NCBI GenBank assembly: GCA_001600695.1
Contig: BCKQ01000002.1
Location: 1,137,184 to 1,201,183, forward strand
Direction: 5' to 3'
DNA: 64,000 bases
Origin: Ascoidea asiatica JCM 7603
Taxonomy: Eukaryota; Fungi; Ascomycota
Of the stretch, positions 8,965-23,136 are shown one piece after another. Both the position numbers and the translations under genes were made by a program. How positions within the stretch are numbered: the stretch's first letter is position 1; each line of letters starts with the position of its first letter. The notes under the pieces were generated by a model. That model was given only the letters and a program-made list of their open reading frames with translations. It made no database searches and had not been told where the DNA came from.

Positions 8965-10698
8965 CTATGGTTTTAAAAATTTTTGAACGATAACATTCTC
9001 AGATACATCACAATATCTATAGTTTAGATTATCTAAAAATTCTTGAAATTTTTTATCATCTTCCTTTGGAACATCTAGTCCTGCTAATACTTGTGCCATA
9101 TCTGATCCATGATTTCTATAATGAAATAAGGTTAAATTCCATTGACCTTTTAAATTCTCTAAAAATTTAGTTAAAGCTCCTGGTTTTTCAGGAAATTCAA
9201 AACTTAATAATCTTTCTCCGGGAATATTTGGACTACCTCCAACAAGATATCTACCATGAGATTTTGCAATTTCATTATTTGAAATATCAATAGCAGAAAA
9301 TCCAATTTTTTCCAATTTTTCAACAACTTCATGAATATCTTCATTTCTATTTTTTACACTAAATGAAGTATATATACAAGCTGGAATTGGTTCTCCATTA
9401 GTAGATTGTAATGAAGATTTTTCATTATAACGATAAGAAAATTCAGTTACAGATCTTGGATGTATAATAGATTGTAATTTTTGAAAAGATCCTGGAATAT
9501 CAGGTATTGTTATCAACATAAAAACTTCTTTACCTTCACCAAGAACAGCTCTTTCACTTACAAATCTTAATCTATCAAAATTCATATTTGCACCAGATAA
9601 TACAGGAACATAAGTTTTTTTAGAATGATCAATTTTTGGATTTTCAGCAATATATTTTTTCATACCAGCAACAGTCATTGCTCCGGATGGTTCAACAACA
9701 GATCTTGTATCTTCAAATACATCTTTAATTGCAGCACAAATTTCATCAGTATTTACACGAATAACTTCATCAACATTTTCCATACATATACGAGTAGTTT
9801 CAATACCCATATTTTTAACAGCAGTTCCATCAGCAAAACTTCCAACTGAATCAAGTATAACATGTTTTCCAGTTTTCTTAGATTGGTATAAAGCATCAGC
9901 ATCATAAGTTTCAACACCTATCACTTTAACATTAGGAGCAATACGTTTAAGATAAGAAGATACACCAGCAATTAAACCACCACCACCAACAGCACAAAAC
10001 ACTGCTGATAGACTACCACATTTAATTTGTCTTAATAATTCTAAAGCAATAGTTCCTTGACCTGCAATAACCAAAGGATGATCAAAAGGTGGAATATTTG
10101 TCAAATCATGTTCTTTTGTAAGTTTTGCACATTGTTCTTTTGCACTATCAAAATCTTCACCAAATAATACAACATTTGCACCAAGTCTACTTACGTTTGT
10201 AAATTTTATAGAAGGAGTTGCGAGTGGCATAACGATTGTGGATTTAATGCCTAATCTTTTACTAGAATAAGCAACACCTTGAGCATGATTTCCAGCAGAA
10301 CAAGCAATAACACCTTTTGCTTTTTTATCATCTGGTAAATTGGCAATCATATTATAAGCACCTCTTAATTTAAATGAAAAAACAGGTAATAAATCTTCTC
10401 TTTTCAAAAAAACATTAGAATTAGTTTTGGCAGATAAAGAATAAGCATTGGTTATTGGTGATTCATCTATAACATCATAAACTCTAGAAGTTAAAATCAT
10501 TCTTACATAATCTGGTTCACCATTTGGTAATAAATTTTCTGGATTTAAATCTGGAAAAGTAGATGATTTTACTGTTGAATTGAATCTAGCCAAAACACTT
10601 TTTTGATTATTTATATTATACAGGTTATGAAAATGAGATTTTGAGGAAAGTACAGTCCTTGATATTTTTTGAAGCAAAGCCTCATTTAGCAAAACCAT
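8965..10698 (-). CDS. ILV1: Threonine dehydratase, mitochondrial
   Basis: LKREDLLPVFSFKLRGAYN (PLP lysine), SAGNHAQG, VGGGGL, SGANMNFDRLRF, regulatory domain; basic presequence. Confidence 0.97.
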   Translation of the reverse strand: MVLLNEALLQKISRTVLSSKSHFHNLYNINNQKSVLARFNSTVKSSTFPDLNPENLLPNGEPDYVRMILTSRVYDVIDESPITNAYSLSAKTNSNVFLKREDLLPVFSFKLRGAYNMIANLPDDKKAKGVIACSAGNHAQGVAYSSKRLGIKSTIVMPLATPSIKFTNVSRLGANVVLFGEDFDSAKEQCAKLTKEHDLTNIPPFDHPLVIAGQGTIALELLRQIKCGSLSAVFCAVGGGGLIAGVSSYLKRIAPNVKVIGVETYDADALYQSKKTGKHVILDSVGSFADGTAVKNMGIETTRICMENVDEVIRVNTDEICAAIKDVFEDTRSVVEPSGAMTVAGMKKYIAENPKIDHSKKTYVPVLSGANMNFDRLRFVSERAVLGEGKEVFMLITIPDIPGSFQKLQSIIHPRSVTEFSYRYNEKSSLQSTNGEPIPACIYTSFSVKNRNEDIHEVVEKLEKIGFSAIDISNNEIAKSHGRYLVGGSPNIPGERLLSFEFPEKPGALTKFLENLKGQWNLTLFHYRNHGSDMAQVLAGLDVPKEDDKKFQEFLDNLNYRYCDVSENVIVQKFLKP

Positions 10699-10941
10699 TT
10701 GATGAAAGTTATTAATTTACAGATAATTTATTCTTGAAATACAGTAGAAGTGAAATTTAATTGAAAGTGAAAAAAAAAAAATAAAAGAATCGAAGTAAGT
10801 AAAGTCAAATAAATTGAGATGAAAAAGTGAAGAAGAAAATTATTTATTTTTATAAGTTTTAAGGATTGAAAATAAAAATGTCTTATCTTTGAATAATTAG
10901 TTGTAAATGGAGTGAAATATCTTTCAAAACACAGTAATTTT

Positions 10942-10950
10942 ATGACTCAA
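10942..10950. promoter_or_regulatory. Gcn4 response element (ATGACTCAA) upstream of ILV1
   Basis: TGACTCA core about 245 nt upstream of an amino-acid biosynthetic gene that is a classical Gcn4 target. Confidence 0.65.
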
Positions 10951-11268
10951 AGATTGAAAAATTTCGAGACCCAGTAACGCCATAGTCTATGAGAATATTA
11001 AATAACGTTAAATAAACTTGTTTGAGACATTTCATACAAATAAGGGTTTAGGACAAATAAGCACGATATTTCGGGGGATCGTAGTTAATATCGGGAGGCG
11101 TATGTGGGGCTGTCCTAACTTAGGCTTATGAAAGTAACCCGGAAATAAATCTAAATTTGATTGCGTTTTACAGTGATAAAGATGGGCGATAAAGAGATGA
11201 TAATTTGAATTGGTTTGAATTGTTTTGAAGAGATTCATTATCCACAAATTGAATATATTAATTAAACT

Positions 11269-12936
11269 ATGGAACTGGATGAAGATTACGATGAGAACCA
11301 TAATCAATCCAATCCAGAACAGGAGTCCAATAAAGTAGCTCAACAGGATCAAACTGCAGGCACTGGTAATTCTGAGAGCTCAAATAATCTTGCAAATTTA
11401 AAAAATTCAAATAAATCCAATAATGAGTTATCAAACTCTAATCATGAATTAGATGAAGAAGATGATGATGATGATGACGATGATGATTTTGAAGATCAGC
11501 ATGTAAATGTATCGAACTCAAAAAAGAATAAGAATAAAAATGGAAGTAAAAATTTAAAAAATGAAAAAACTTTAAAAAAAAAACCTAAGAAAGTTAGAAT
11601 TGATCCATCGATGCAAGGTGCAAATGGAGGTTATGCATGGGAAGCAGATTATAAAAAATCTTGGGATCTTTTACAAGAAGATGATAGTTCTTTAGCTGGA
11701 ATAGTTTCAAATATAGTTGAATCTAGAAAAAGAAGAATAATTAAAGATGCAAAATCTTTTCAAAGAGGTATCATAAGAACTTTAATATTAATAATCGATG
11801 CTTCAATAGCTATGAGAGAAAAAGATTTAAGACCAAATAGATTCTCATTAACAATACAATATTCAATCGAATTTGTTACTGAATTTTTTGATCAAAATCC
11901 TATATCTCAATTAGGTGTTGTAATGATGAGAGATGGTGTTGCAACTGTAATATCTGATTTAAGTGGAAATCCTTCAGATCATATAAATGTTCTCAAAAAA
12001 TTAAAAAAATTAGATGGAGAGCCAAGAGGTGATGCATCTTTACAAAATTCATTAGAAATGGCAAGAGGTTTATTATTACATATATCTGATAATTGTACAA
12101 GAGAAGTTTTAATTATATTTGGTTCATTGTTAACATTAGATCCTGGAGATATTAATAAAACTATAACATCATTAGTTAAAGAGAAAATAAGAGTTAAAAT
12201 TATAAGTTTATCAGCTCAAGTTTCAATTTGTGAAAAAATATGTTATAAAACAAATTTTAATGATAAATCTTCTTATAATGTTATTTTAGATGAAGTTCAT
12301 TTCAAAGATTTATTAATGAGTGCAGTTACACCAATGGCAATTGCAAAACAATCAGATTCAACTGCAATTAATAATTCAGGTACATATTCTTTAATTAAAA
12401 TGGGTTTTCCAAAAAGAATTTCAGAAATGTTACCATCATTTTGTTCATGTCATTCTAAATTAACATTTGGTGGATATATTTGTCCAAATTGTCAATCAAA
12501 AGTTTGTTCATTACCAAATGTTTGTCCATGTTGTAATTTAAGATTAATTTCATCAGTTCATTTAGCTAGATCATATCATCATCTTTTTCCTTTAAAGAAT
12601 TTTATTGAAGTTCCATTAAGTTTAAGTTATAAATATTTTAGATGTTTTAGTTGTCAAAGTGAATTTCCTAATTTAAATTTATTAGATAAAAAATTAAATT
12701 TAACACAAGAAGATGTTGATTCAATTAATGAAATTCAAAATCAAGCATTATTACAAAATAAATCAATGAATGAATTTGAAATTCAATCTTTAGATAAACT
12801 GTTTTTAAAAAAATTTAAAAATTTAAGAAGTTCAAGATATGAATGTAAAAATTGTAAAAGACAATTTTGTATTGATTGTGATGTTTTAATTCATGATATT
12901 ATGCATGTTTGTCCAGGATGTGAATTACAAAATTAA
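11269..12936 (+). CDS. SSL1: TFIIH p44 subunit
   Basis: GGYAWE, FQRGIIR, EKDLRPNRF, EFFDQNPISQLG vWA domain; C4 zinc motif; HLARSYHHLFPL; C-terminal RING-like domain. Confidence 0.96.
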   Translation: MELDEDYDENHNQSNPEQESNKVAQQDQTAGTGNSESSNNLANLKNSNKSNNELSNSNHELDEEDDDDDDDDDFEDQHVNVSNSKKNKNKNGSKNLKNEKTLKKKPKKVRIDPSMQGANGGYAWEADYKKSWDLLQEDDSSLAGIVSNIVESRKRRIIKDAKSFQRGIIRTLILIIDASIAMREKDLRPNRFSLTIQYSIEFVTEFFDQNPISQLGVVMMRDGVATVISDLSGNPSDHINVLKKLKKLDGEPRGDASLQNSLEMARGLLLHISDNCTREVLIIFGSLLTLDPGDINKTITSLVKEKIRVKIISLSAQVSICEKICYKTNFNDKSSYNVILDEVHFKDLLMSAVTPMAIAKQSDSTAINNSGTYSLIKMGFPKRISEMLPSFCSCHSKLTFGGYICPNCQSKVCSLPNVCPCCNLRLISSVHLARSYHHLFPLKNFIEVPLSLSYKYFRCFSCQSEFPNLNLLDKKLNLTQEDVDSINEIQNQALLQNKSMNEFEIQSLDKLFLKKFKNLRSSRYECKNCKRQFCIDCDVLIHDIMHVCPGCELQN

Positions 12937-13031
12937 TTTTTTTTTTTTTTCTTTAGAAATAAAATGAAGTGAAATATATGTATTATTAAATAACTTGTAA
13001 TAAAAGATTAAATTTTTTTTTTTTATAAAAA

Positions 13032-13667
13032 TTAAACCAATTGTTTTCTTGAACCATTAAAGAATAAATGAACTACAGCAACTTGTAAAGCTGCCATTCC
13101 ACACATTAATACAACTTCAAAAATACTGAACCAAAATATTCTTGCTTCAGTTGATTTGACAGTTGATTGATTTCTATTATTTCTAGTTTTATAATATTGT
13201 AAAGTTCTTATAAGATTATTAAGTTTTGTATCAATATTTTCAACAGAAGATACCATACCTTCTACACTTGCAGGTTGATTTGGAGTATCAGGTAAATGAG
13301 CTTTAAAATCATTTTCAAGTTTAATTTCAAAATCTACAACTTTTTCTGCAAAAGTTGACATACCATTTGCAAAACAAAATTCATATTCACCTGGTGTATC
13401 AGCTCTAAATACCCAATCACCTTGTCTTTGTTTTTCTTTAGATACAATTAATTTTCCATCAGGACCAGTGATTGCATAATCTACATCAAAAGATCCACCT
13501 GATTGAACAGCAAAATAATAACCAACATATACTTCTGGTTGATCTGTTAAAACATAATAACAGGATTTCTCTTGAGCTCCAAGTACAAAAGTTAAAGCAG
13601 AAGCATTAGAAAAGGATATTAAAGAAATTAAAACAAGAAGAAAGTGTATGAAATCTATCTTGATCAT
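13032..13667 (-). CDS. ERP2: p24 family gamma subunit (GOLD domain), Erp2/Erp4-like
   Basis: Signal peptide, FAVQSGGSFDVDY, YEFCF-N-MSTFAEKVVDFEI, YYKTRNNRNQSTVKSTE, TM helix and FF..RKQLV tail. Confidence 0.8.
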   Translation of the reverse strand: MIKIDFIHFLLVLISLISFSNASALTFVLGAQEKSCYYVLTDQPEVYVGYYFAVQSGGSFDVDYAITGPDGKLIVSKEKQRQGDWVFRADTPGEYEFCFANGMSTFAEKVVDFEIKLENDFKAHLPDTPNQPASVEGMVSSVENIDTKLNNLIRTLQYYKTRNNRNQSTVKSTEARIFWFSIFEVVLMCGMAALQVAVVHLFFNGSRKQLV

Positions 13668-14607: not shown

Positions 14608-16851
14608 ATGGAGCTTTTAAATGAAAAGGGCTATTCAAAAACTTTAGCCAATAGTGTTCTTGATGAACTTTATTCAAGAGCAGAAAAGATATCTTCGAAT
14701 TTACCTCCAATTTCTTTAGATTTTAATAATGATAATAATAATTCAAATAATAAAAATACTTTAAAATCTAGTGTTTCTCAAACTTTTAATAAAAATCATC
14801 AAGCAAATTTTAATAAAATGGAATCAATAAATAATTATGCTTTAAGAAAAAAAATCTTAATTTCAAATCAAAAATATCAAAAAATTCAATTAAATCAAAA
14901 AAATCAATCAAAAAGACAAATTAAACCATTACCACAAAGGAGATTACATAGAACTGAATATGAAATTAAAAATATTCCTCAATCACTTAATAATAATGAT
15001 AATAAAGTTAATAAACCTCAAAATCTTCCAAAAACTCCAGAAGATAAAAATAAAAGACTTTCTTCAGGTCAATTGAGCAGTGCTTCAAAAAGAAGAAAAA
15101 CTTCTTTAGGTCCAAAAGAAAATAAAGCTCATACTAAAAATTTAGAGAATAAAATGCTTAAAAATTTGAAAAATTTGGAAAATTTACAAAATCCTAAAAA
15201 ATTAACTAATAATACTAATATCAATATTACTAATAGTAATGACGATAATGATAGTGATGATTATAACCAAAAAAAACATATGATTATACCCAAATCAAGA
15301 AACTATAGAAATTTACATCAATTAACAACTTCTACCAATAATGATAATGATAACGAGACTAATAATGATTATATAGAAAAAAAATATAATGAAATCAAAT
15401 CTAAATTAGAAAAATATAAAAAGAAAAAAATGATAAAAGAAAATTCTTATAATATTCAAAATAATTATAATATTGAAAATAAATATAACTATATAAATGA
15501 AAGAAATAAAAATCGTCAAAAATTTGCTGATTCAAATTATGATTATGAACAATCTTTAATTTTAAAATTTGATCGTCTACCTTCTCCTTCAAAATTAAAA
15601 TATCATAATGATCTTCATAATAATCTAGATGATATTAATGATCTTGATAATTATGAAAAACTTGAAAAAATAGATCCAATCAACATTAGTAATATGATTA
15701 ATAACTGTAATAGTCATAATAACAATAGTGGTAATGATAATGACTTTGATGATGATTTTTTATCTACTAATTATACAGACTCAAATAAAGTATCAAACTT
15801 GAAATCAGAATCCAATATTCTTTTCAATCCTAACTCAAATTCTATTTCTCATTCTAATTTTCATTCAAATCTCAATAAAAATATCTGCGAAAAAGAAATT
15901 AATATTTTCAGTGATGATTCAAAATGTTCAAGTGACTCTAATGATAGTATTGTAATTGTAAAAGAAACTAAAATTTCTAATAATAATATTTTAAATCGTT
16001 TACATTCAAATAAAACAACTTCAAAAATAGATAAACCTTCTCAGCCAACAAGAAATTTATTATCTAACTCCACATTATTAAATAAGTCTAAACCGTTAAA
16101 TAAATATTCAACTAGATCAAATAATATACCTAGAACTACAAGTAGTTTATCTAATAGAATGACCAATAATGCCCGACCTATTTTACCTAGTAGATCAATA
16201 AGAACAAATAGAACAATTTCTACGAATTCTACAACTTCAACAACTTCTACATCTTCTGCAATTTCTAATGGCTCTACTATTAGCACACAAAGTTCAATGC
16301 TTTCTTTGTATGGAAGTAGAAAACCTCTGAATTCTCGATCAACATCTCAATCATCAAATTATACAAACTCAACAGAATCTTCCAATTTATATACCATGGA
16401 TTCTGGCTTTAAGAAACCTTTAATGCATAATCCAAGTGATCCAAGATTAAAATATAGAACTATAACATCTATAAATTCCACAAAAAATAATGGTAGCTCA
16501 ACTATTCGTTCTCATAGTTCAATTAGTTCGAGCCATTCAAATCATTCGAATAATTCCAGGAATCTCAATAATAATATTGCAGCCCAAAAAATAAAGCAAA
16601 ATTCTCTGTTGTCATTTCAGAGACCTACACTTTCTTCAACAAAGAAATCAAAAATTCCTCGAGCTATAAATGAATTACCGGCTAGTACTTTAAATTCAAT
16701 GGCTAAACGAAGAGGACCAGAAACAAAAAATACATTATCTCACAAGGAAACTTATCTGAATTTAAAACGTTCTATGGGAATGAGAAATATAAGTCGGAGC
16801 CGAGATATAAATACAAATAGAAGAAATATCCTTAAAAAGGATTATCTATAA
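14608..16851 (+). CDS. SHE1: She1-like mitotic spindle / microtubule-associated dynein regulator
   Basis: GYSKTLANSVLDELYSRA and FNKNHQANFNKMESINNY match recalled S. cerevisiae She1 blocks (GVSKRLGNSVLSELDSRA; FQAKHDSQFGQMESLDTHY); FQRPTLSS resembles FLMPTTNS; basic S/T/R-rich C-terminus. Confidence 0.75.
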   Translation: MELLNEKGYSKTLANSVLDELYSRAEKISSNLPPISLDFNNDNNNSNNKNTLKSSVSQTFNKNHQANFNKMESINNYALRKKILISNQKYQKIQLNQKNQSKRQIKPLPQRRLHRTEYEIKNIPQSLNNNDNKVNKPQNLPKTPEDKNKRLSSGQLSSASKRRKTSLGPKENKAHTKNLENKMLKNLKNLENLQNPKKLTNNTNINITNSNDDNDSDDYNQKKHMIIPKSRNYRNLHQLTTSTNNDNDNETNNDYIEKKYNEIKSKLEKYKKKKMIKENSYNIQNNYNIENKYNYINERNKNRQKFADSNYDYEQSLILKFDRLPSPSKLKYHNDLHNNLDDINDLDNYEKLEKIDPINISNMINNCNSHNNNSGNDNDFDDDFLSTNYTDSNKVSNLKSESNILFNPNSNSISHSNFHSNLNKNICEKEINIFSDDSKCSSDSNDSIVIVKETKISNNNILNRLHSNKTTSKIDKPSQPTRNLLSNSTLLNKSKPLNKYSTRSNNIPRTTSSLSNRMTNNARPILPSRSIRTNRTISTNSTTSTTSTSSAISNGSTISTQSSMLSLYGSRKPLNSRSTSQSSNYTNSTESSNLYTMDSGFKKPLMHNPSDPRLKYRTITSINSTKNNGSSTIRSHSSISSSHSNHSNNSRNLNNNIAAQKIKQNSLLSFQRPTLSSTKKSKIPRAINELPASTLNSMAKRRGPETKNTLSHKETYLNLKRSMGMRNISRSRDINTNRRNILKKDYL

Positions 16852-18300: not shown

Positions 18301-18900
18301 ATGGGTATTAGTCGTGATTCTCGTCACAAAAGATCAGCCACAGGTGCTAAACGTGATAAATTCAGAAAGAAGAGAAAGTTCGAGTTAGGTCGTCAACCAG
18401 CTAATACTAAAATTGGTGCCAAACGTATCCATACTGTCAGAACTAGAGGTGGAAATCAAAAATTTAGAGCTTTAAGACTTGATACTGGTAATTTTTCATG
18501 GGCTTCTGAAGGTATTTCAAGAAAAACAAGAATTGTTGGTGTCTCTTACCATCCATCTAATAATGAGTTAGTCAGAACAAATACTTTAACTAAATCTGCT
18601 ATTGTTCAAATTGATGCTACCCCATTCAGACAATGGTATGAAAGTCATTATGGTTTACCTTTAAGTAAAAAAGGAAAATCTACTGAAGAAGAAGTTAAAA
18701 AATCAAGCAGAATTGAACGTAAATTAGCTTCAAGAGTTTCTGGTTCTAAAGTTGAACAAACTTTAAGTAGTCAATTCGGTGCCGGTCGTCTTTATGCTTG
18801 TGTTTCTTCAAGACCAGGTCAATCTGGTAGATGTGATGGTTACATCTTAGAAGGTGAAGAATTAGCTTTCTACTTAAGAAGATTAAATACTAAAAAATAA
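18301..18900 (+). CDS. RPS8: 40S ribosomal protein S8 (eS8)
   Basis: [15 protein letters not shown] ... [20 protein letters not shown]. Confidence 0.99.
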
Positions 18901-19320
18901 ATTTGTCATAAATAATAAAATGTAATTTATTTCATGTTTTTAAAAGTAATATATTAAATGCCATTTGTAGTTTTAGTCTTGTAAATTTTCTTTTCATTGC
19001 TCAAGGAGTATACTTTATCGAAAACTTTTACAGTTAATATATTTTAATGATAAATTATTGATTAGCAATTATTGAAATGTCTATAAAGAAATTTTATAAA
19101 AATCAGTACCAATTTTAATAACCGATATAATGAGAAAAGCAGAAGAAGGTATAAAAGATGAATTATACAAAAAATGAAATAAGTTAATTGAAATAAGAAA
19201 AAAAAATTTTAAGTTGATAAAAACTAATAGAGAAGAATAAAAAGTATCAACCAAAAAAGAAAATGAAAAGGAAAAAGCAAATTGAAAGTAAAGTAAAAAA
19301 TTGGATTCTGTGATTTTTTT

Positions 19321-22245
19321 CTATTGTACATTAACTTCGATATTTAGTAGTCTAGTTTTACGCTTTTCCAATTTGGAGAAAGCCCCAACAGCCATGTAAT
19401 CTAATTCATTTAACTTGTTTTGTCTTTCCATTTCTATAGCCAATAAACCATCCTTTTCACAAAGAGGTTTACCATCTAATACAAAATAGTCTTTGATTAT
19501 ATACTGTCCACATTGAATACATTTTAAACAGTCAAGGTGAAATCTTTCTCTATTATTATTTTCTAGACAAGGACCTTCTATACCATTATTGCATAATTTA
19601 CATAAAGACCCATTTAAAAAATGAAAATCAAATTGACAATAAGGACAATCATCAATGACATAACAATTAGAACCCTTTTTGAACAAAACTTTGCATCTAT
19701 AACATGCAAAACATTTTCTATGCCAGCAACCAGACATTTGATGATCTTTTGACCAGATCGATTTTCCAGTAATATCATCTCCACATTTCCTACAGGGCCC
19801 TTCACCCGATGGATATTTAAATTCTGGATTTATATCTTCAAGTTTAGTTTTTTGAAGCTCCTCTGCCAATTCTCTGATGGCTTTTTCTGCCTTTGTTTCT
19901 TCAATCAATGAATTTATTTCATCTATAACAGGACTAGTATTAAAGAAGTCATCATCAATATCAAATTCTGATTTATTGGTATTGATTTTCTCCAAGTCTA
20001 ATGGCTGTTCAGGTGATGATAAAAGCTTGAATTCTGCACTATTATTATTTGGAGTATCAATCAAATTGAGACTATTTAATGGATCATTTTCATTTGTTAA
20101 TTTCGGAGAAGCTTGAGTCGATTTGGAAGGAGGATTTGTTTTTGGATTATTAGGATCAATTATTGTAAGATCTGCAAATTCTTTCTCAATTCGAGAAGCT
20201 ATCGATCTACTACCAATTGAAGACCCAGAGCTTATTGGTCTATGATTTATTAATTCTTTATCGAGAGATAAAGGATCTGTATGACTTGTAGGGGACAAAG
20301 GAGTGTCAATGAAAACACCATTTGTTGGAACAGGGGATTGACTTGGAGATATAATACTATTTTTATTACTTAGAGACTTTTCTAAAGATTCAAAGAGGTC
20401 ATTTGCTAAAGTCTGTGATTGTTGTAATACAGGAGTATTATTACTAGAAGAAACATATGTTGAAAGAGGACTTTTCTTATTTTCAGAATGTTCCTTCTTT
20501 GAAATATCATCATGTTCTTGTTCATCTAAATCCACCAAGTATACTGAAGAAGCTATGGAGGTACGTTTGTACTTATTCAAATCATTTACCATAATAGAAT
20601 TTCTAGGATTATTTGATTTCGGAGCTTGTTTTGAATCTCTCGTATTTGTTTTCTCGTTATTATGATATTCTTCATCTTCTTCTTCATCTTCTTTTTCATC
20701 TTCATCTTCTTCTAAAATAACATCTTCTTTATTATTAAGCAGAATTTCTAAATTAGGAACTAATGGTGTTGAATCTCTTTTAGAAGTGAAACCACTGTTA
20801 GTACCAACGTTGCTATTAGGTAAAACTCCAATTGAAAATCTATCTAATTTATTTGACAATTTTCCAATCAATTTCTTATTTTGTTTACTAGCCAATGACT
20901 CGTAATCAGGATCAATTGGTGAGGAAGGTTGACTGTTTTCACTATTCAGTCCAGAAACTTGACTGGATAGACTAATTGGACTTTTTGGACTTTCCATTGA
21001 TACTGGACTATCGATTGATATTGTAGGAATAGCAGAAGAATTCTGAAAAATAGTCAATGTTTTTGGATCATAAGTTTTAGAGTCATTTTTGCTAATGGTA
21101 TCATACCTTGTTAAACTTATATTTGGAATATTAGAATGCTTTACGGAACTATTTATATCCCTGGATGAAATTTCATCTTTATTCTTTTCCACCGAATTAT
21201 TTTTTTCTAAATTAAAACCTTCATTATTGGAACTGCTATTCTTATCATTGAATTTAATTTCTTTTTTAATAGATTGGTTATTGAGATCACCAACATTATC
21301 CTGGGTCTCTAATTCTTTAAGATTCTTAAAATTGGAAATTTCTGAGTTGCTTGGATCGGATTCAAAGTTGTTATTATTATCTGTATTTTCAGGTATTTTT
21401 GGTTGGGTATTATTAAAGTTATTATTAAAGTTATTATCGAAATTATTATTATTCTTATTATTACCAATATTTGAAGGGTTATTCCTGATTTGACTTGGGG
21501 TATTATTTACATTATTATTAATGGATTGAATAGATTGATCATTTTTATTTGGAGAAGTAAAATCAACAGTTGTTCTAGGAGTTGAATTTGATGAAGTGAA
21601 TGGAGAATTTAATTCAGAAGAAAATGAACTTGGAGAAAAAACGGAACTTAAAGTAGTAGATTGAGTATCATGTTTATTAGAATTGTAATTATTATTAAAT
21701 TGAATATTTCTTGGAGATTGAAAAGGAGAATTTAAAGAACCAGTTGGAGTACCAATGGAATTATTAAATTGATTTGGAATAATTTGAGTATTTAATGGAG
21801 GCATATTTTTTGAAATTTGAAATTGAGTTGGAATTTGAGATTGAATTGGAGATTGAACATTTCGAACAAATTTTTGATGATTTAAATTTGAATTTAAATG
21901 TGGAGAACCAAAAGGAGGTTGAATTCTTGATTGTTTTTGAACAACTTTTTGATTTTGATTAAAATGATTTGGAGATTGAGAAGAATTAAATCCAGAAGGG
22001 GAACTTGTATTATTGTTGTTATTGTTATTGTTATTGTTATTAGGGTGGTTATTTTGATTTGCTAAAGATATATCTACATGTAAATCAGGAGGATAATTAT
22101 TATTATGATTATTATTAAGATTGTTATATGGTTTTTCTTCTATAATTGAATTAAATCTTGAAGAATTAAAATTTGGTTTTGGAGAATAAACGGAAGAAGC
22201 AGTTGTGAAAGTTGAATCACGAAAATTATTTGAGGAATTATATAA

Positions 22246-22314
<69 letters not shown>

Positions 22315-22849
22315 GATATTAGGAATAGGTGGTTGAAAATTATTAATATTTTTATTTAAAGGAGAAAAAGAACGAGGAGAATTTGGCGAATGTGATTGGG
22401 AATGTGATTGAGATTGAGAATGAGATTGAGAAGGGGAAGTGGAAGAAGAACTTGAATTTGAATTTGAGTTTGAACTTCTATTTGATTTTGAATTTAAAGG
22501 AATATTTGAACGTAAAGGGGAAGATAAATTAGATGAAGGAGCAGAATTACGAGGAGAAGAAAATGAAGAAGAATAATTAGGAGATTTTTTATTATTTAAA
22601 TCATTTGCAATGTTATTTATTGGCGAATTATTTGAAGAATTATTTGAATCATTTTTTGTTGAAATGGTTGAAGAAACTTCAGAATTTGAATTTGAATTAG
22701 AATTTAAATTAGAATTAAAATTTTGTTCTGAATTAGGTAATAAATTTTGAGCAGATTTTGATTTTGATTTTGAAAGTTTTGAGAAAAATGGAGATCTTGG
22801 AGATTTTAAGAAATTTAAATTTGAATGAGAATGATTTTTATGATTTGAA

Positions 22850-22886
<37 letters not shown>

Positions 22887-23136
22887 CAAATTTATTAATT
22901 TCAAAACCAGCTCTTTCATAAACACCTTTATATGATCTATTTAAATCTAAAGGAGGAAAATTACTATTAATTCTATTTAAATTTAAAATTGGAGTAACTC
23001 TTGAAGAATATATTGAAACATTTGATGAAGAAACATTTGAAGAAGATATATTTGATCTAATTGGAGTTAAATTTTGATTTGGATTAAGATTCAGATTTTG
23101 ATTTTGATTTTGGTTTATATTTGTATTTGACTGCAT
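19321..23136 (-). CDS. PXL1: Paxillin-like LIM-domain protein
   Basis: YPSGEGPCRKC...WHRKCFAC and CKLCNNGIEG..FHLDCLKC tandem LIM domains at the C-terminus; YKGVYERAGF and EKRKTRL conserved patches; long N/S/P low-complexity middle. Confidence 0.85.
22247..22315. repeat. (AAT)n trinucleotide microsatellite encoding about 23 Asn in PXL1
   Basis: Read directly; similar tracts near 3380-3417 (VPS5) and 6535-6572 (intergenic). Confidence 0.9.

What the first reader, a model, noticed from the sequence alone, without database searches (positions are those of the whole stretch)
14785..14853. She1 ortholog carries a NuSAP-like motif: possible unrecognised fungal-metazoan spindle protein family
Seen: residues 60-82 read FNKNHQANFNKMESINNYALRKK. 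Recalled human NuSAP1 has FKKLHEAHFKEMESIDQYIERKK, 13 of 23 identical without gaps, while the N-terminus matches yeast She1. Established: both are basic, disordered, microtubule-bundling spindle proteins. Inference: this sequence bridges She1 and NuSAP, which I do not know to be described as homologs. The comparison sequences are from memory.
Basis: partly seen in the sequence, partly recalled or inferred. Interest (0 to 1): 0.8.

Follow-up and report, generated by a model that had tools for sequence, protein, structure and literature searches.

The report
She1-like yeast protein with NuSAP motif
A yeast spindle protein of the She1 family carries a short helix that a curated model of the vertebrate spindle protein NuSAP also recognises, so She1, which the field says has no known animal relative, may be a distant relative of NuSAP.

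Summary
Window 14785-14853 encodes exactly the quoted 23 residues, aa 60-82 of a 747-aa ORF (14608-16851, +).

The N-terminal 100 aa pass Pfam's curated cut-offs for both families:
- Msap1/SHE1: 33.1 bits against a cut-off of 27.
- NUSAP: 27.3 bits against a cut-off of 26.

Residues 1-50 alone hit only SHE1. Residues 41-100 alone hit only NUSAP (27.9 bits, E 2.5e-6). Seven other 100-aa pieces of the ORF hit neither.

I assembled 17 homologues from Saccharomycopsis, Candida, Spathaspora and environmental yeasts. None carries a precomputed Pfam family. The motif F/Y-x3-H-x3-F-x2-M-E/D-S-I-x2-HY is conserved in all of them. Of the N-terminal pieces, 14 of 17 hit SHE1 and 5 of 17 hit NUSAP. No other family recurs.

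AlphaFold2 predicts the motif as one amphipathic helix. The similarity covers only about 45 residues. No SAP domain, ChHD or C-terminal match was found.

I could not obtain any S. cerevisiae She1 or NuSAP sequence, so the reciprocal profile-profile test was not run. The human peptide remains unverified.

No indexed paper mentions both proteins. Two She1 papers say no animal homologue is known.

Verdict: the motif link is real and apparently undescribed. Common descent is likely (about 0.55) but unproven.

The parts
14608..16851 (+). Intron-less ORF of 747 aa plus stop: a basic, N/S/K-rich She1-family protein and likely spindle microtubule-associated protein
   Evidence: 119 K+R against 66 D+E. 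Upstream in-frame stops mean the ATG at 14608 is the first possible start. It is single copy in the 20.3-Mb genome.
14608..14703 (+). Motif M1 (aa 1-32), built around GYS-x2-L-x3-VL-x-EL-x2-RA. It is She1-specific and presumably equals PISH1.
   Evidence: aa 1-50 alone hit Msap1 only (18.1 bits, model positions 14-61). G8, Y9, V17, L18, E20 and A25 are invariant in 17 homologues. AlphaFold2 predicts helices at aa 2-6 and 11-31 with pLDDT 84-93.
14785..14853 (+). Motif M2 core (aa 60-82), the NuSAP-like motif of the finding: F-x3-H-x3-F-x2-MESI-x2-Y followed by RKK. It presumably equals PISH2.
   Evidence: NUSAP scores 27.9 bits (E 2.5e-6, model positions 12-58) on aa 41-100 alone. H64, F68, I74 and Y77 are invariant, and M71 and S73 are at least 90% conserved. 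The conserved residues fall within about 120 degrees of one helix face.
14791..14910 (+). Predicted long alpha-helix (aa 62-101) that carries M2 and the basic residues after it
   Evidence: AlphaFold2 with the 17-sequence alignment A4 gives pLDDT 65-82 here. The rest of aa 1-180 is disordered and pTM is 0.23.
15079..15120 (+). Motif M3 (aa 158-171): a conserved basic cluster, S-A-x-KRR(K/R)T-x2-G, that looks like a nuclear localisation signal
   Evidence: K161, R163 and T165 are invariant in 17 homologues. It has no Pfam hit of its own. The function is inferred.
16606..16650 (+). Degenerate copy (aa 667-681) of the family's C-terminal motif M4. In Candida-clade members M4 reads P-F-S-L-Y-x-K-P-T-I-S-S-S-Q-K-S.
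   Evidence: Seen by eye in the C-termini printed. It has no Pfam match to Msap1, NUSAP or TPX2. Residue 667 is a CTG codon.
15958..16848 (+). Basic, S/T-rich, low-complexity C-terminal third (aa 451-747), a candidate microtubule-binding region
   Evidence: It holds 49 K+R, 10 D+E and 95 S+T in 297 residues. The role is inferred by analogy with the She1 C-terminal region aa 194-338, which binds and cross-links microtubules (Zhu et al. 2017, PMC5584168). No sequence similarity was detected.

Best explanation
The ORF encodes this yeast's single She1-family spindle protein. Its layout is:
- a short N-terminal module of two conserved helical motifs, M1 and M2;
- a conserved basic KRRxT cluster, M3;
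- a long disordered, basic, serine/threonine-rich tail.

M2 is an amphipathic helix. Its conserved residues (F60, H64, F68, M71, I74, Y77) line one face. The same motif opens Pfam's NUSAP model. In vertebrate NuSAP that part of the model should lie in the predicted helical region that carries the bipartite nuclear localisation signal, around aa 194-211. That placement is inferred.

The most likely reading is that She1 and NuSAP inherited this helix from a common ancestral spindle protein, and that the disordered remainder diverged beyond recognition.

Proposed mechanism (inferred, not shown): the hydrophobic face of M2, together with M1, docks onto a conserved spindle partner. In S. cerevisiae the region holding PISH1 and PISH2 is needed for normal binding to Sli15/INCENP, for restraining Ipl1/Aurora B loading and for metaphase spindle stability. 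It is not needed for microtubule binding or dynein inhibition. The basic tail would bind and bundle microtubules. The flanking basic clusters would give nuclear import and possibly importin/Ran control, as in NuSAP.
For: - Both Pfam models match the same 100-aa fragment above their curated cut-offs: Msap1 33.1 against 27, NUSAP 27.3 against 26.
- Splitting the fragment assigns M1 to She1 only and M2 to NUSAP (27.9 bits, E 2.5e-6).
- The Msap1 score rises from 18.1 bits for aa 1-50 to 33.1 for aa 1-100. Motif-only pieces hit Msap1 in 2 of 16 homologues. The She1 model therefore also contains M2.
- The Msap1 match is replicated in homologues: 14 of 17 at E<=0.05, six of them above the cut-off.
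- The NUSAP match is replicated in 5 of 17: window, Saccharomycopsis P0002 (E 1.2e-4), P0130 (E 1.6e-4), P0128 (E 3.2e-4) and one more. No other family recurs.
- Seven other pieces of the ORF and ten C-terminal pieces of homologues hit neither family.
- The motif is invariant at H, F, I and Y across the family.
- It is predicted to be a helix, and its conserved residues share one face.
None of 5000 shuffles exceeds 11.1. That peptide is unverified.
- From the literature: the N-terminal region with PISH1/2 is needed for the Sli15 interaction and for Ipl1 control (PMC5584168). NuSAP has a bipartite NLS inside a predicted helical domain, placed at aa 194-211 (PMC2172854, PMC12173916).
Against: - The similarity covers only about 45 of the 297 NUSAP model positions, and the scores sit at the cut-off (25.7-27.9 bits depending on the fragment).
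- Full-length proteins give no Pfam hit at all.
- 11 of 16 homologues do not reach NUSAP even with motif-only pieces.
- There is no SAP domain, no ChHD, and no match to NuSAP's microtubule-binding part.
- M1, M3 and M4 have no detected counterpart in NUSAP.
- No She1 from Saccharomycetaceae and no NuSAP sequence was in hand, so there is no reciprocal or profile-profile test.
- She1 is reported absent from basidiomycete yeasts. NuSAP was originally described as lacking clear invertebrate homologues. Common descent would therefore need many losses or extreme divergence.
- Equating M1 and M2 with PISH1 and PISH2 rests on Pfam model coordinates. The published alignment figure is not held.
Confidence: 0.55

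Rival explanations
1. The motif is shared but the ancestry is not. M2 is a short helical interaction motif that arose independently in two disordered, basic spindle proteins because both bind the same conserved partner, for example an importin or the chromosomal passenger complex.
For: Only about 25-45 residues match. Nothing else in the two architectures corresponds: no SAP, no ChHD, and M1, M3 and M4 are unmatched. Both proteins are largely disordered (She1 is 96% disordered by the prediction cited in the 2021 preprint). Short motifs evolve easily in such proteins. The taxonomic gap is wide.
Against: Eight positions spread over 18 residues agree, and they include every invariant position of the yeast family. 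That is more than typical convergent linear motifs share. The motif sits in a similar setting in both proteins, as a helix followed by a basic cluster ahead of a basic microtubule-binding tail.
Confidence: 0.3
2. The match is chance, inflated by composition. Both Pfam models describe basic, low-complexity proteins, and the N/K-rich yeast sequence scores against them spuriously.
For: Scores sit near the cut-off. Hits vanish when full-length proteins are scanned. Most homologues do not reach NUSAP.
Against: Seven equally biased 100-aa pieces of the same ORF and ten C-terminal pieces of homologues hit neither family. The hit lands on the same model positions (10-58) in five different proteins. 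E-values run from 2.5e-6 to 3e-4 per protein against the whole library. The matching residues are the family's invariant ones, not its K/N content.
Confidence: 0.07
3. The gene is not the She1 orthologue. It is a separate yeast protein family that only shares the N-terminal module with She1.
For: The Msap1 match covers only model positions 14-113 of 366. The C-terminal motif M4, which is very well conserved in Candida-clade members, has no match in the Msap1 model. There is no synteny between the window, S. crataegensis and C. albicans loci.
Against: Six family members exceed the Msap1 curated cut-off. The genome has a single such gene, and the family search of the genome found no other Msap1 candidate. 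Length, charge and disorder resemble She1.
Confidence: 0.1

Closest known systems
She1 (YBL031W, S. cerevisiae; Pfam PF17077 Msap1)
   Same: The N-terminal two-motif module matches model positions 14-113 above the curated cut-off. The protein is basic, mostly disordered and single copy. By analogy, the N-terminal module would serve control of the chromosomal passenger complex and the tail would bind microtubules.
   Different: It is more than twice as long (747 against 338 aa). No similarity to the She1 C-terminal microtubule-binding and dynein-regulating part was detected. Its M2 scores better against NUSAP than against the She1 model. The family has its own C-terminal motif M4.
NuSAP / NUSAP1 (vertebrates; Pfam PF16006)
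   Same: The helical motif F-x3-H-x3-F-x2-MESI-x2-Y followed by basic residues matches model positions 10-58 at the curated cut-off. Both are basic spindle proteins that bundle microtubules and are regulated by an Aurora kinase (Ipl1/Aurora B for She1; Aurora A at Ser-240 for NuSAP per PMC12173916) (PMC5584168, PMC2172854, PMC12173916).
   Different: There is no SAP domain, no ChHD, no conserved KEN box and no match to the NuSAP microtubule-binding region (aa 243-367). NuSAP has no detected counterpart of M1.
MAP4 / MAP9
   Same: The 2021 She1 preprint proposes them as possible metazoan functional counterparts of She1: disordered microtubule-associated proteins that restrain dynein.
   Different: No sequence relation was seen here, and no Pfam hit to MAP families appeared in any scan.

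Membership tests
She1 / Msap1 (PF17077) | Match to the curated family model at or above its gathering score (27 bits) | tested here: met
   The window's aa 1-100 score 33.1 bits, aa 1-180 score 30.1 and aa 1-200 score 29.6. Five homologues score 27.4-34.3. Caveat: the full-length protein gives no hit.
She1 / Msap1 (PF17077) | Two neighbouring N-terminal motifs, PISH1 and PISH2 (Zhu et al. 2017) | tested here: inconclusive
   Two conserved motifs, M1 and M2, align to model positions 14-61 and about 62-113. In S. cerevisiae, PISH1 lies within aa 1-89 and PISH2 within aa 90-126. The published alignment is not held, so the equation is inferred.
She1 / Msap1 (PF17077) | C-terminal microtubule-binding and dynein-regulating domain (S. 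cerevisiae aa 127-338 / 194-338) | tested here: not met
   No piece beyond aa 100 of the window ORF, and no C-terminal piece of nine homologues, matches Msap1 at E<=10. Only the composition agrees: 49 K+R and 95 S+T in the last 297 aa.
She1 / Msap1 (PF17077) | Binds and cross-links microtubules, inhibits dynein, binds Sli15 | not testable with these tools
   Needs biochemistry or genetics.
NuSAP (PF16006) | Match to the curated family model at or above its gathering score (26 bits) | tested here: met
   Scores are 27.3 bits (aa 1-100), 27.9 (aa 41-100) and 26.1 (aa 1-180). They drop to 25.9 and 25.7 on aa 1-200 and aa 41-180. The match is marginal, and its core covers only model positions 10-58 of 297.
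NuSAP (PF16006) | N-terminal SAP motif | tested here: not met
   No SAP-family hit on aa 1-50 or 1-100 at E<=10. The profile of 17 N-termini finds no chain in the PDB.
NuSAP (PF16006) | C-terminal microtubule-binding region and charged helical domain (ChHD) | tested here: not met
   No NUSAP hit from any piece beyond aa 100 or from the C-termini of homologues. Alignments that extend to model positions 121-134 add no score.
NuSAP (PF16006) | Reciprocal recognition: NuSAP proteins score against a She1 profile, and the two profiles align | not tested
No NuSAP or Saccharomycetaceae She1 sequence could be retrieved.

The most novel reading that the evidence does not exclude
She1 and NuSAP are true orthologues or remote homologues: one ancient opisthokont family of spindle microtubule-bundling proteins. 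Its only recognisable remnant is a partner-docking helix (PISH2 in She1, the helix next to the NLS in NuSAP). If so, yeast results on restraining Aurora B/INCENP loading and inhibiting dynein would predict untested functions of human NUSAP1, a gene linked to cancer and microcephaly. Ran/importin control of NuSAP would likewise predict how She1 is regulated.
Probability: 0.45. Interest if true: 0.8.

Novelty: new member of a known kind. Interest (0 to 1): 0.62.

Why it matters
Two She1 papers say that a metazoan She1 homologue has eluded sequence searches or is not apparent (PMC5584168; bioRxiv 10.1101/2021.02.02.429374). The original NuSAP paper found no clear homologues outside vertebrates (PMC2172854).

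A shared, conserved, one-faced helix gives both fields a concrete and cheap test. Mutate the F/H/F/M/I/Y face in yeast She1 and in NUSAP1, and ask whether both lose the same partner.

The work also shows that the She1-like proteins of Candida albicans, Spathaspora, Saccharomycopsis and related yeasts carry no family annotation in the public sets I saw. The reason is that family models miss them unless the N-terminus is scanned alone.

Tried and rejected
**Searches that gave little**
- Word-index search with the window's N-terminus found nothing.
- Word-index search with the fragment P0002 returned almost only junk matches to its read-through tail.
- The exhaustive phmmer search with 100 aa found only one true relative. 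It also found two repeat proteins whose score comes from eight weak repeats.
- Two protein-atlas look-ups gave nothing usable.
- PDB sequence searches with the protein and with the family profile found nothing relevant. The GINS Psf3 hit at E 0.12 was rejected as chance.
- NCBIfam gave nothing.

**Tests that came back negative**
- A third collinear match to NuSAP (the RTP/KRR region): the longer fragments only lower the score.
- A C-terminal match of motif M4 to Msap1, NUSAP or TPX2: none.
- M1 as a degenerate SAP motif: no support from Pfam or PDB.
- Synteny as a test of orthology: the window, S. crataegensis and C. albicans loci share no neighbours.

**Checks on the recalled human peptide**
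- I could not verify it in papers.
- The supplementary alignment of Zhu et al. is not held.

**Not used or not encountered**
- No reads tool was used.
- No spliced gene model was involved.

Full report
**What is there**

Window 14608-16851 (+) is a single uninterrupted ORF of 747 aa. The DNA is very AT-rich, at 20-31% GC. The window comes from a 20.3-Mb yeast assembly.

The finding's coordinates, 14785-14853, translate exactly to the 23 residues quoted, aa 60-82. The protein is rich in N, S and K and is basic (119 K+R against 66 D+E). Its last 297 residues hold 49 K+R, 10 D+E and 95 S+T.

The neighbouring genes are:
- a threonine dehydratase;
- SSL1;
- an emp24-family protein;
- ribosomal protein S8e;
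- a LIM-domain protein.

**Is the motif more than chance?**

The full-length protein gives no Pfam hit. The first 100 aa scanned alone give two hits above the curated cut-offs:

| Pfam family | Bits | Cut-off | E-value | Residues | Model positions |
|---|---|---|---|---|---|
| Msap1/SHE1 (PF17077) | 33.1 | 27 | 4e-8 | aa 2-92 | 14-111 |
| NUSAP (PF16006) | 27.3 | 26 | 4e-6 | aa 42-88 | 10-55 |

Splitting the fragment separates the two signals. Residues 1-50 hit Msap1 only, at 18.1 bits. Residues 41-100 hit NUSAP only, at 27.9 bits and E 2.5e-6.

Seven further 100-aa pieces of the same compositionally biased ORF hit neither family. The genome contains no second gene with this motif.

**The family**

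An exhaustive phmmer search found one true relative. Its cluster contains a 757-aa hypothetical protein of Saccharomycopsis crataegensis. A metagenome scan added a 541-aa yeast protein at L002:2761-4383.

A profile of these three retrieved 15 more proteins. They include uncharacterised proteins of Candida maltosa, Spathaspora passalidarum, Candida albicans and Candida verbasci. None has a precomputed Pfam domain.

The N-terminal alignment of 17 sequences shows three conserved blocks:
- **M1**, around GYS-x2-L-x3-VL-x-EL-x2-RA.
- **M2**, a basic run followed by F/Y-x3-H-x3-F-x2-M-E/D-S-I-x2-HY. H, F, I and Y are invariant.
- **M3**, a KRRxT cluster.

Most members also share a striking C-terminal motif, M4. 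The window keeps only a degenerate copy of it at aa 667-681.

**Family-level Pfam results**

- Of the 17 N-terminal pieces, 14 match Msap1 at E<=0.05, six of them above the cut-off.
- Five of the 17 match NUSAP. No other family recurs.
- With 66-aa pieces holding only M2, NUSAP is again hit by 5 of 16 (best E 3.8e-6) and Msap1 by 2 of 16.

M2 is therefore encoded in both curated models.

The C-terminal pieces of ten members match neither model, nor TPX2. Longer fragments that include M3 add no NUSAP score.

**Structure**

AlphaFold2 on the 17-sequence alignment predicts:
- helices at aa 2-6 and 11-31 (pLDDT 84-93);
- one long helix at aa 62-101 (pLDDT 65-82);
- disorder elsewhere, with pTM 0.23.

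The conserved M2 residues 60, 64, 68, 71, 74 and 77 lie within about 120 degrees of one helical face. That pattern is expected of a helix that docks onto a partner.

**The human side**

I could not obtain any NuSAP or S. cerevisiae She1 sequence. The PDB holds no relative. No paper in the library contains the peptide.

Taken as given, it is 13/23 identical to the window. It scores 18.5 bits against the yeast M2 profile, or 15.0 bits when the window and Saccharomycopsis are left out. The maximum over 5000 shuffles is 11.1.

The firm evidence is the Pfam NUSAP model itself.

**Literature**

- No paper holds both "She1" and "NuSAP".
- Zhu et al. 2017 (PMC5584168) defined PISH1 and PISH2 in the She1 N-terminus from fungal alignments. 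They showed this region is dispensable for dynein regulation and that the N-terminal fragment (aa 1-212) does not bind microtubules. It is needed for normal Sli15 binding, for preventing premature Ipl1 loading and for spindle stability. [quoted passage not shown] - BLAST finds no She1 in Cryptococcus, Trichosporon or Rhodotorula.
- Raemaekers et al. 2003 found no clear NuSAP homologues in invertebrates. They placed a bipartite NLS inside a predicted helical domain.
- A 2025 review places that NLS at aa 194-211, the microtubule-binding region at aa 243-367 and the ChHD at aa 410-430.

**Interpretation**

*Shown:*
- The gene is a She1-family member by Pfam's criterion.
- Its M2 helix is significantly similar to the opening motif of the NUSAP model.
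- The motif is conserved across the yeast family.

*Inferred:*
- M1 and M2 equal PISH1 and PISH2.
- The NuSAP counterpart lies at the NLS-bearing helix.
- The two families share ancestry.
- The helix docks on a conserved partner, either the chromosomal passenger complex (suggested by yeast data) or an importin (suggested by NuSAP data).

*Against full homology:*
- Only about 45 residues match.
- Scores sit at the cut-off.
- SAP, ChHD and the microtubule-binding parts have no counterpart.
- The phylogenetic gap is wide.

I put common descent at about 0.55, a convergent motif at about 0.3 and chance below 0.1.

**Limits**

- All translations use the standard reading of CTG. The relatives belong to clades that reassign CTG. 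The ORF has three CTG codons (aa 574, 667, 717), none in M1-M3.

Noticed in passing
P0127-P0139 C-termini; L002:4240-4383; window 16606-16650: The yeast family shares a very well conserved C-terminal motif of about 30 residues: T-I-P-Q-P-F-S-L-Y-x-K-P-T-I-S-S-S-Q-K-S-L-N-K-F-Q-R-F-K. It matches no Pfam family, including Msap1, NUSAP and TPX2. The window keeps only a degenerate core. It is a candidate microtubule- or partner-binding element.
   Followed up: partly
P0001 (1255 aa) and P0003 (834 aa), hits: These are two repeat proteins of unknown origin. Their roughly 40-residue unit resembles M1 plus the following NLPP-x-SL stretch (8 and 6 weak repeats, summed E 6e-10 and 6e-5). They end in a cysteine-rich tail. 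The resemblance is probably chance, but I did not examine it further.
   Followed up: no
window 14608-16848; P0002, P0123, P0137, L002:2761-4383: Full-length members of this family get no Pfam hit, not even Msap1, while their N-terminal 100-200 aa pass the cut-off. The low-complexity remainder suppresses the match. That would explain why the Candida, Spathaspora and Saccharomycopsis proteins are listed as hypothetical with no family.
   Followed up: yes
L004:8001-10274, L005:8001-9302; window aa 574, 667, 717: The S. crataegensis and C. albicans genes do not translate to the deposited proteins under the table used by the tools, as expected for yeasts that reassign CTG. The window ORF has three CTG codons, one of them at the first residue of the M4-like core.
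   Followed up: partly
P0126, P0129, P0134, P0136, P0137, P0138, about 8-20 residues after M2: A conserved T-P-S-P-Q-K stretch follows M2 in Candida-clade members, giving proline-directed kinase sites. The window has K-T-P-E-D-K further downstream. This recalls the Hog1 site T117 reported within PISH2 of S. cerevisiae She1.
   Followed up: no
window 8965-13667 and 18301-23136: The neighbours are a threonine dehydratase (ILV1-like), SSL1, an emp24/p24 protein, ribosomal protein S8e and a 1271-aa LIM-domain protein. None is shared with the loci of the homologues in S. crataegensis or C. albicans.
   Followed up: yes
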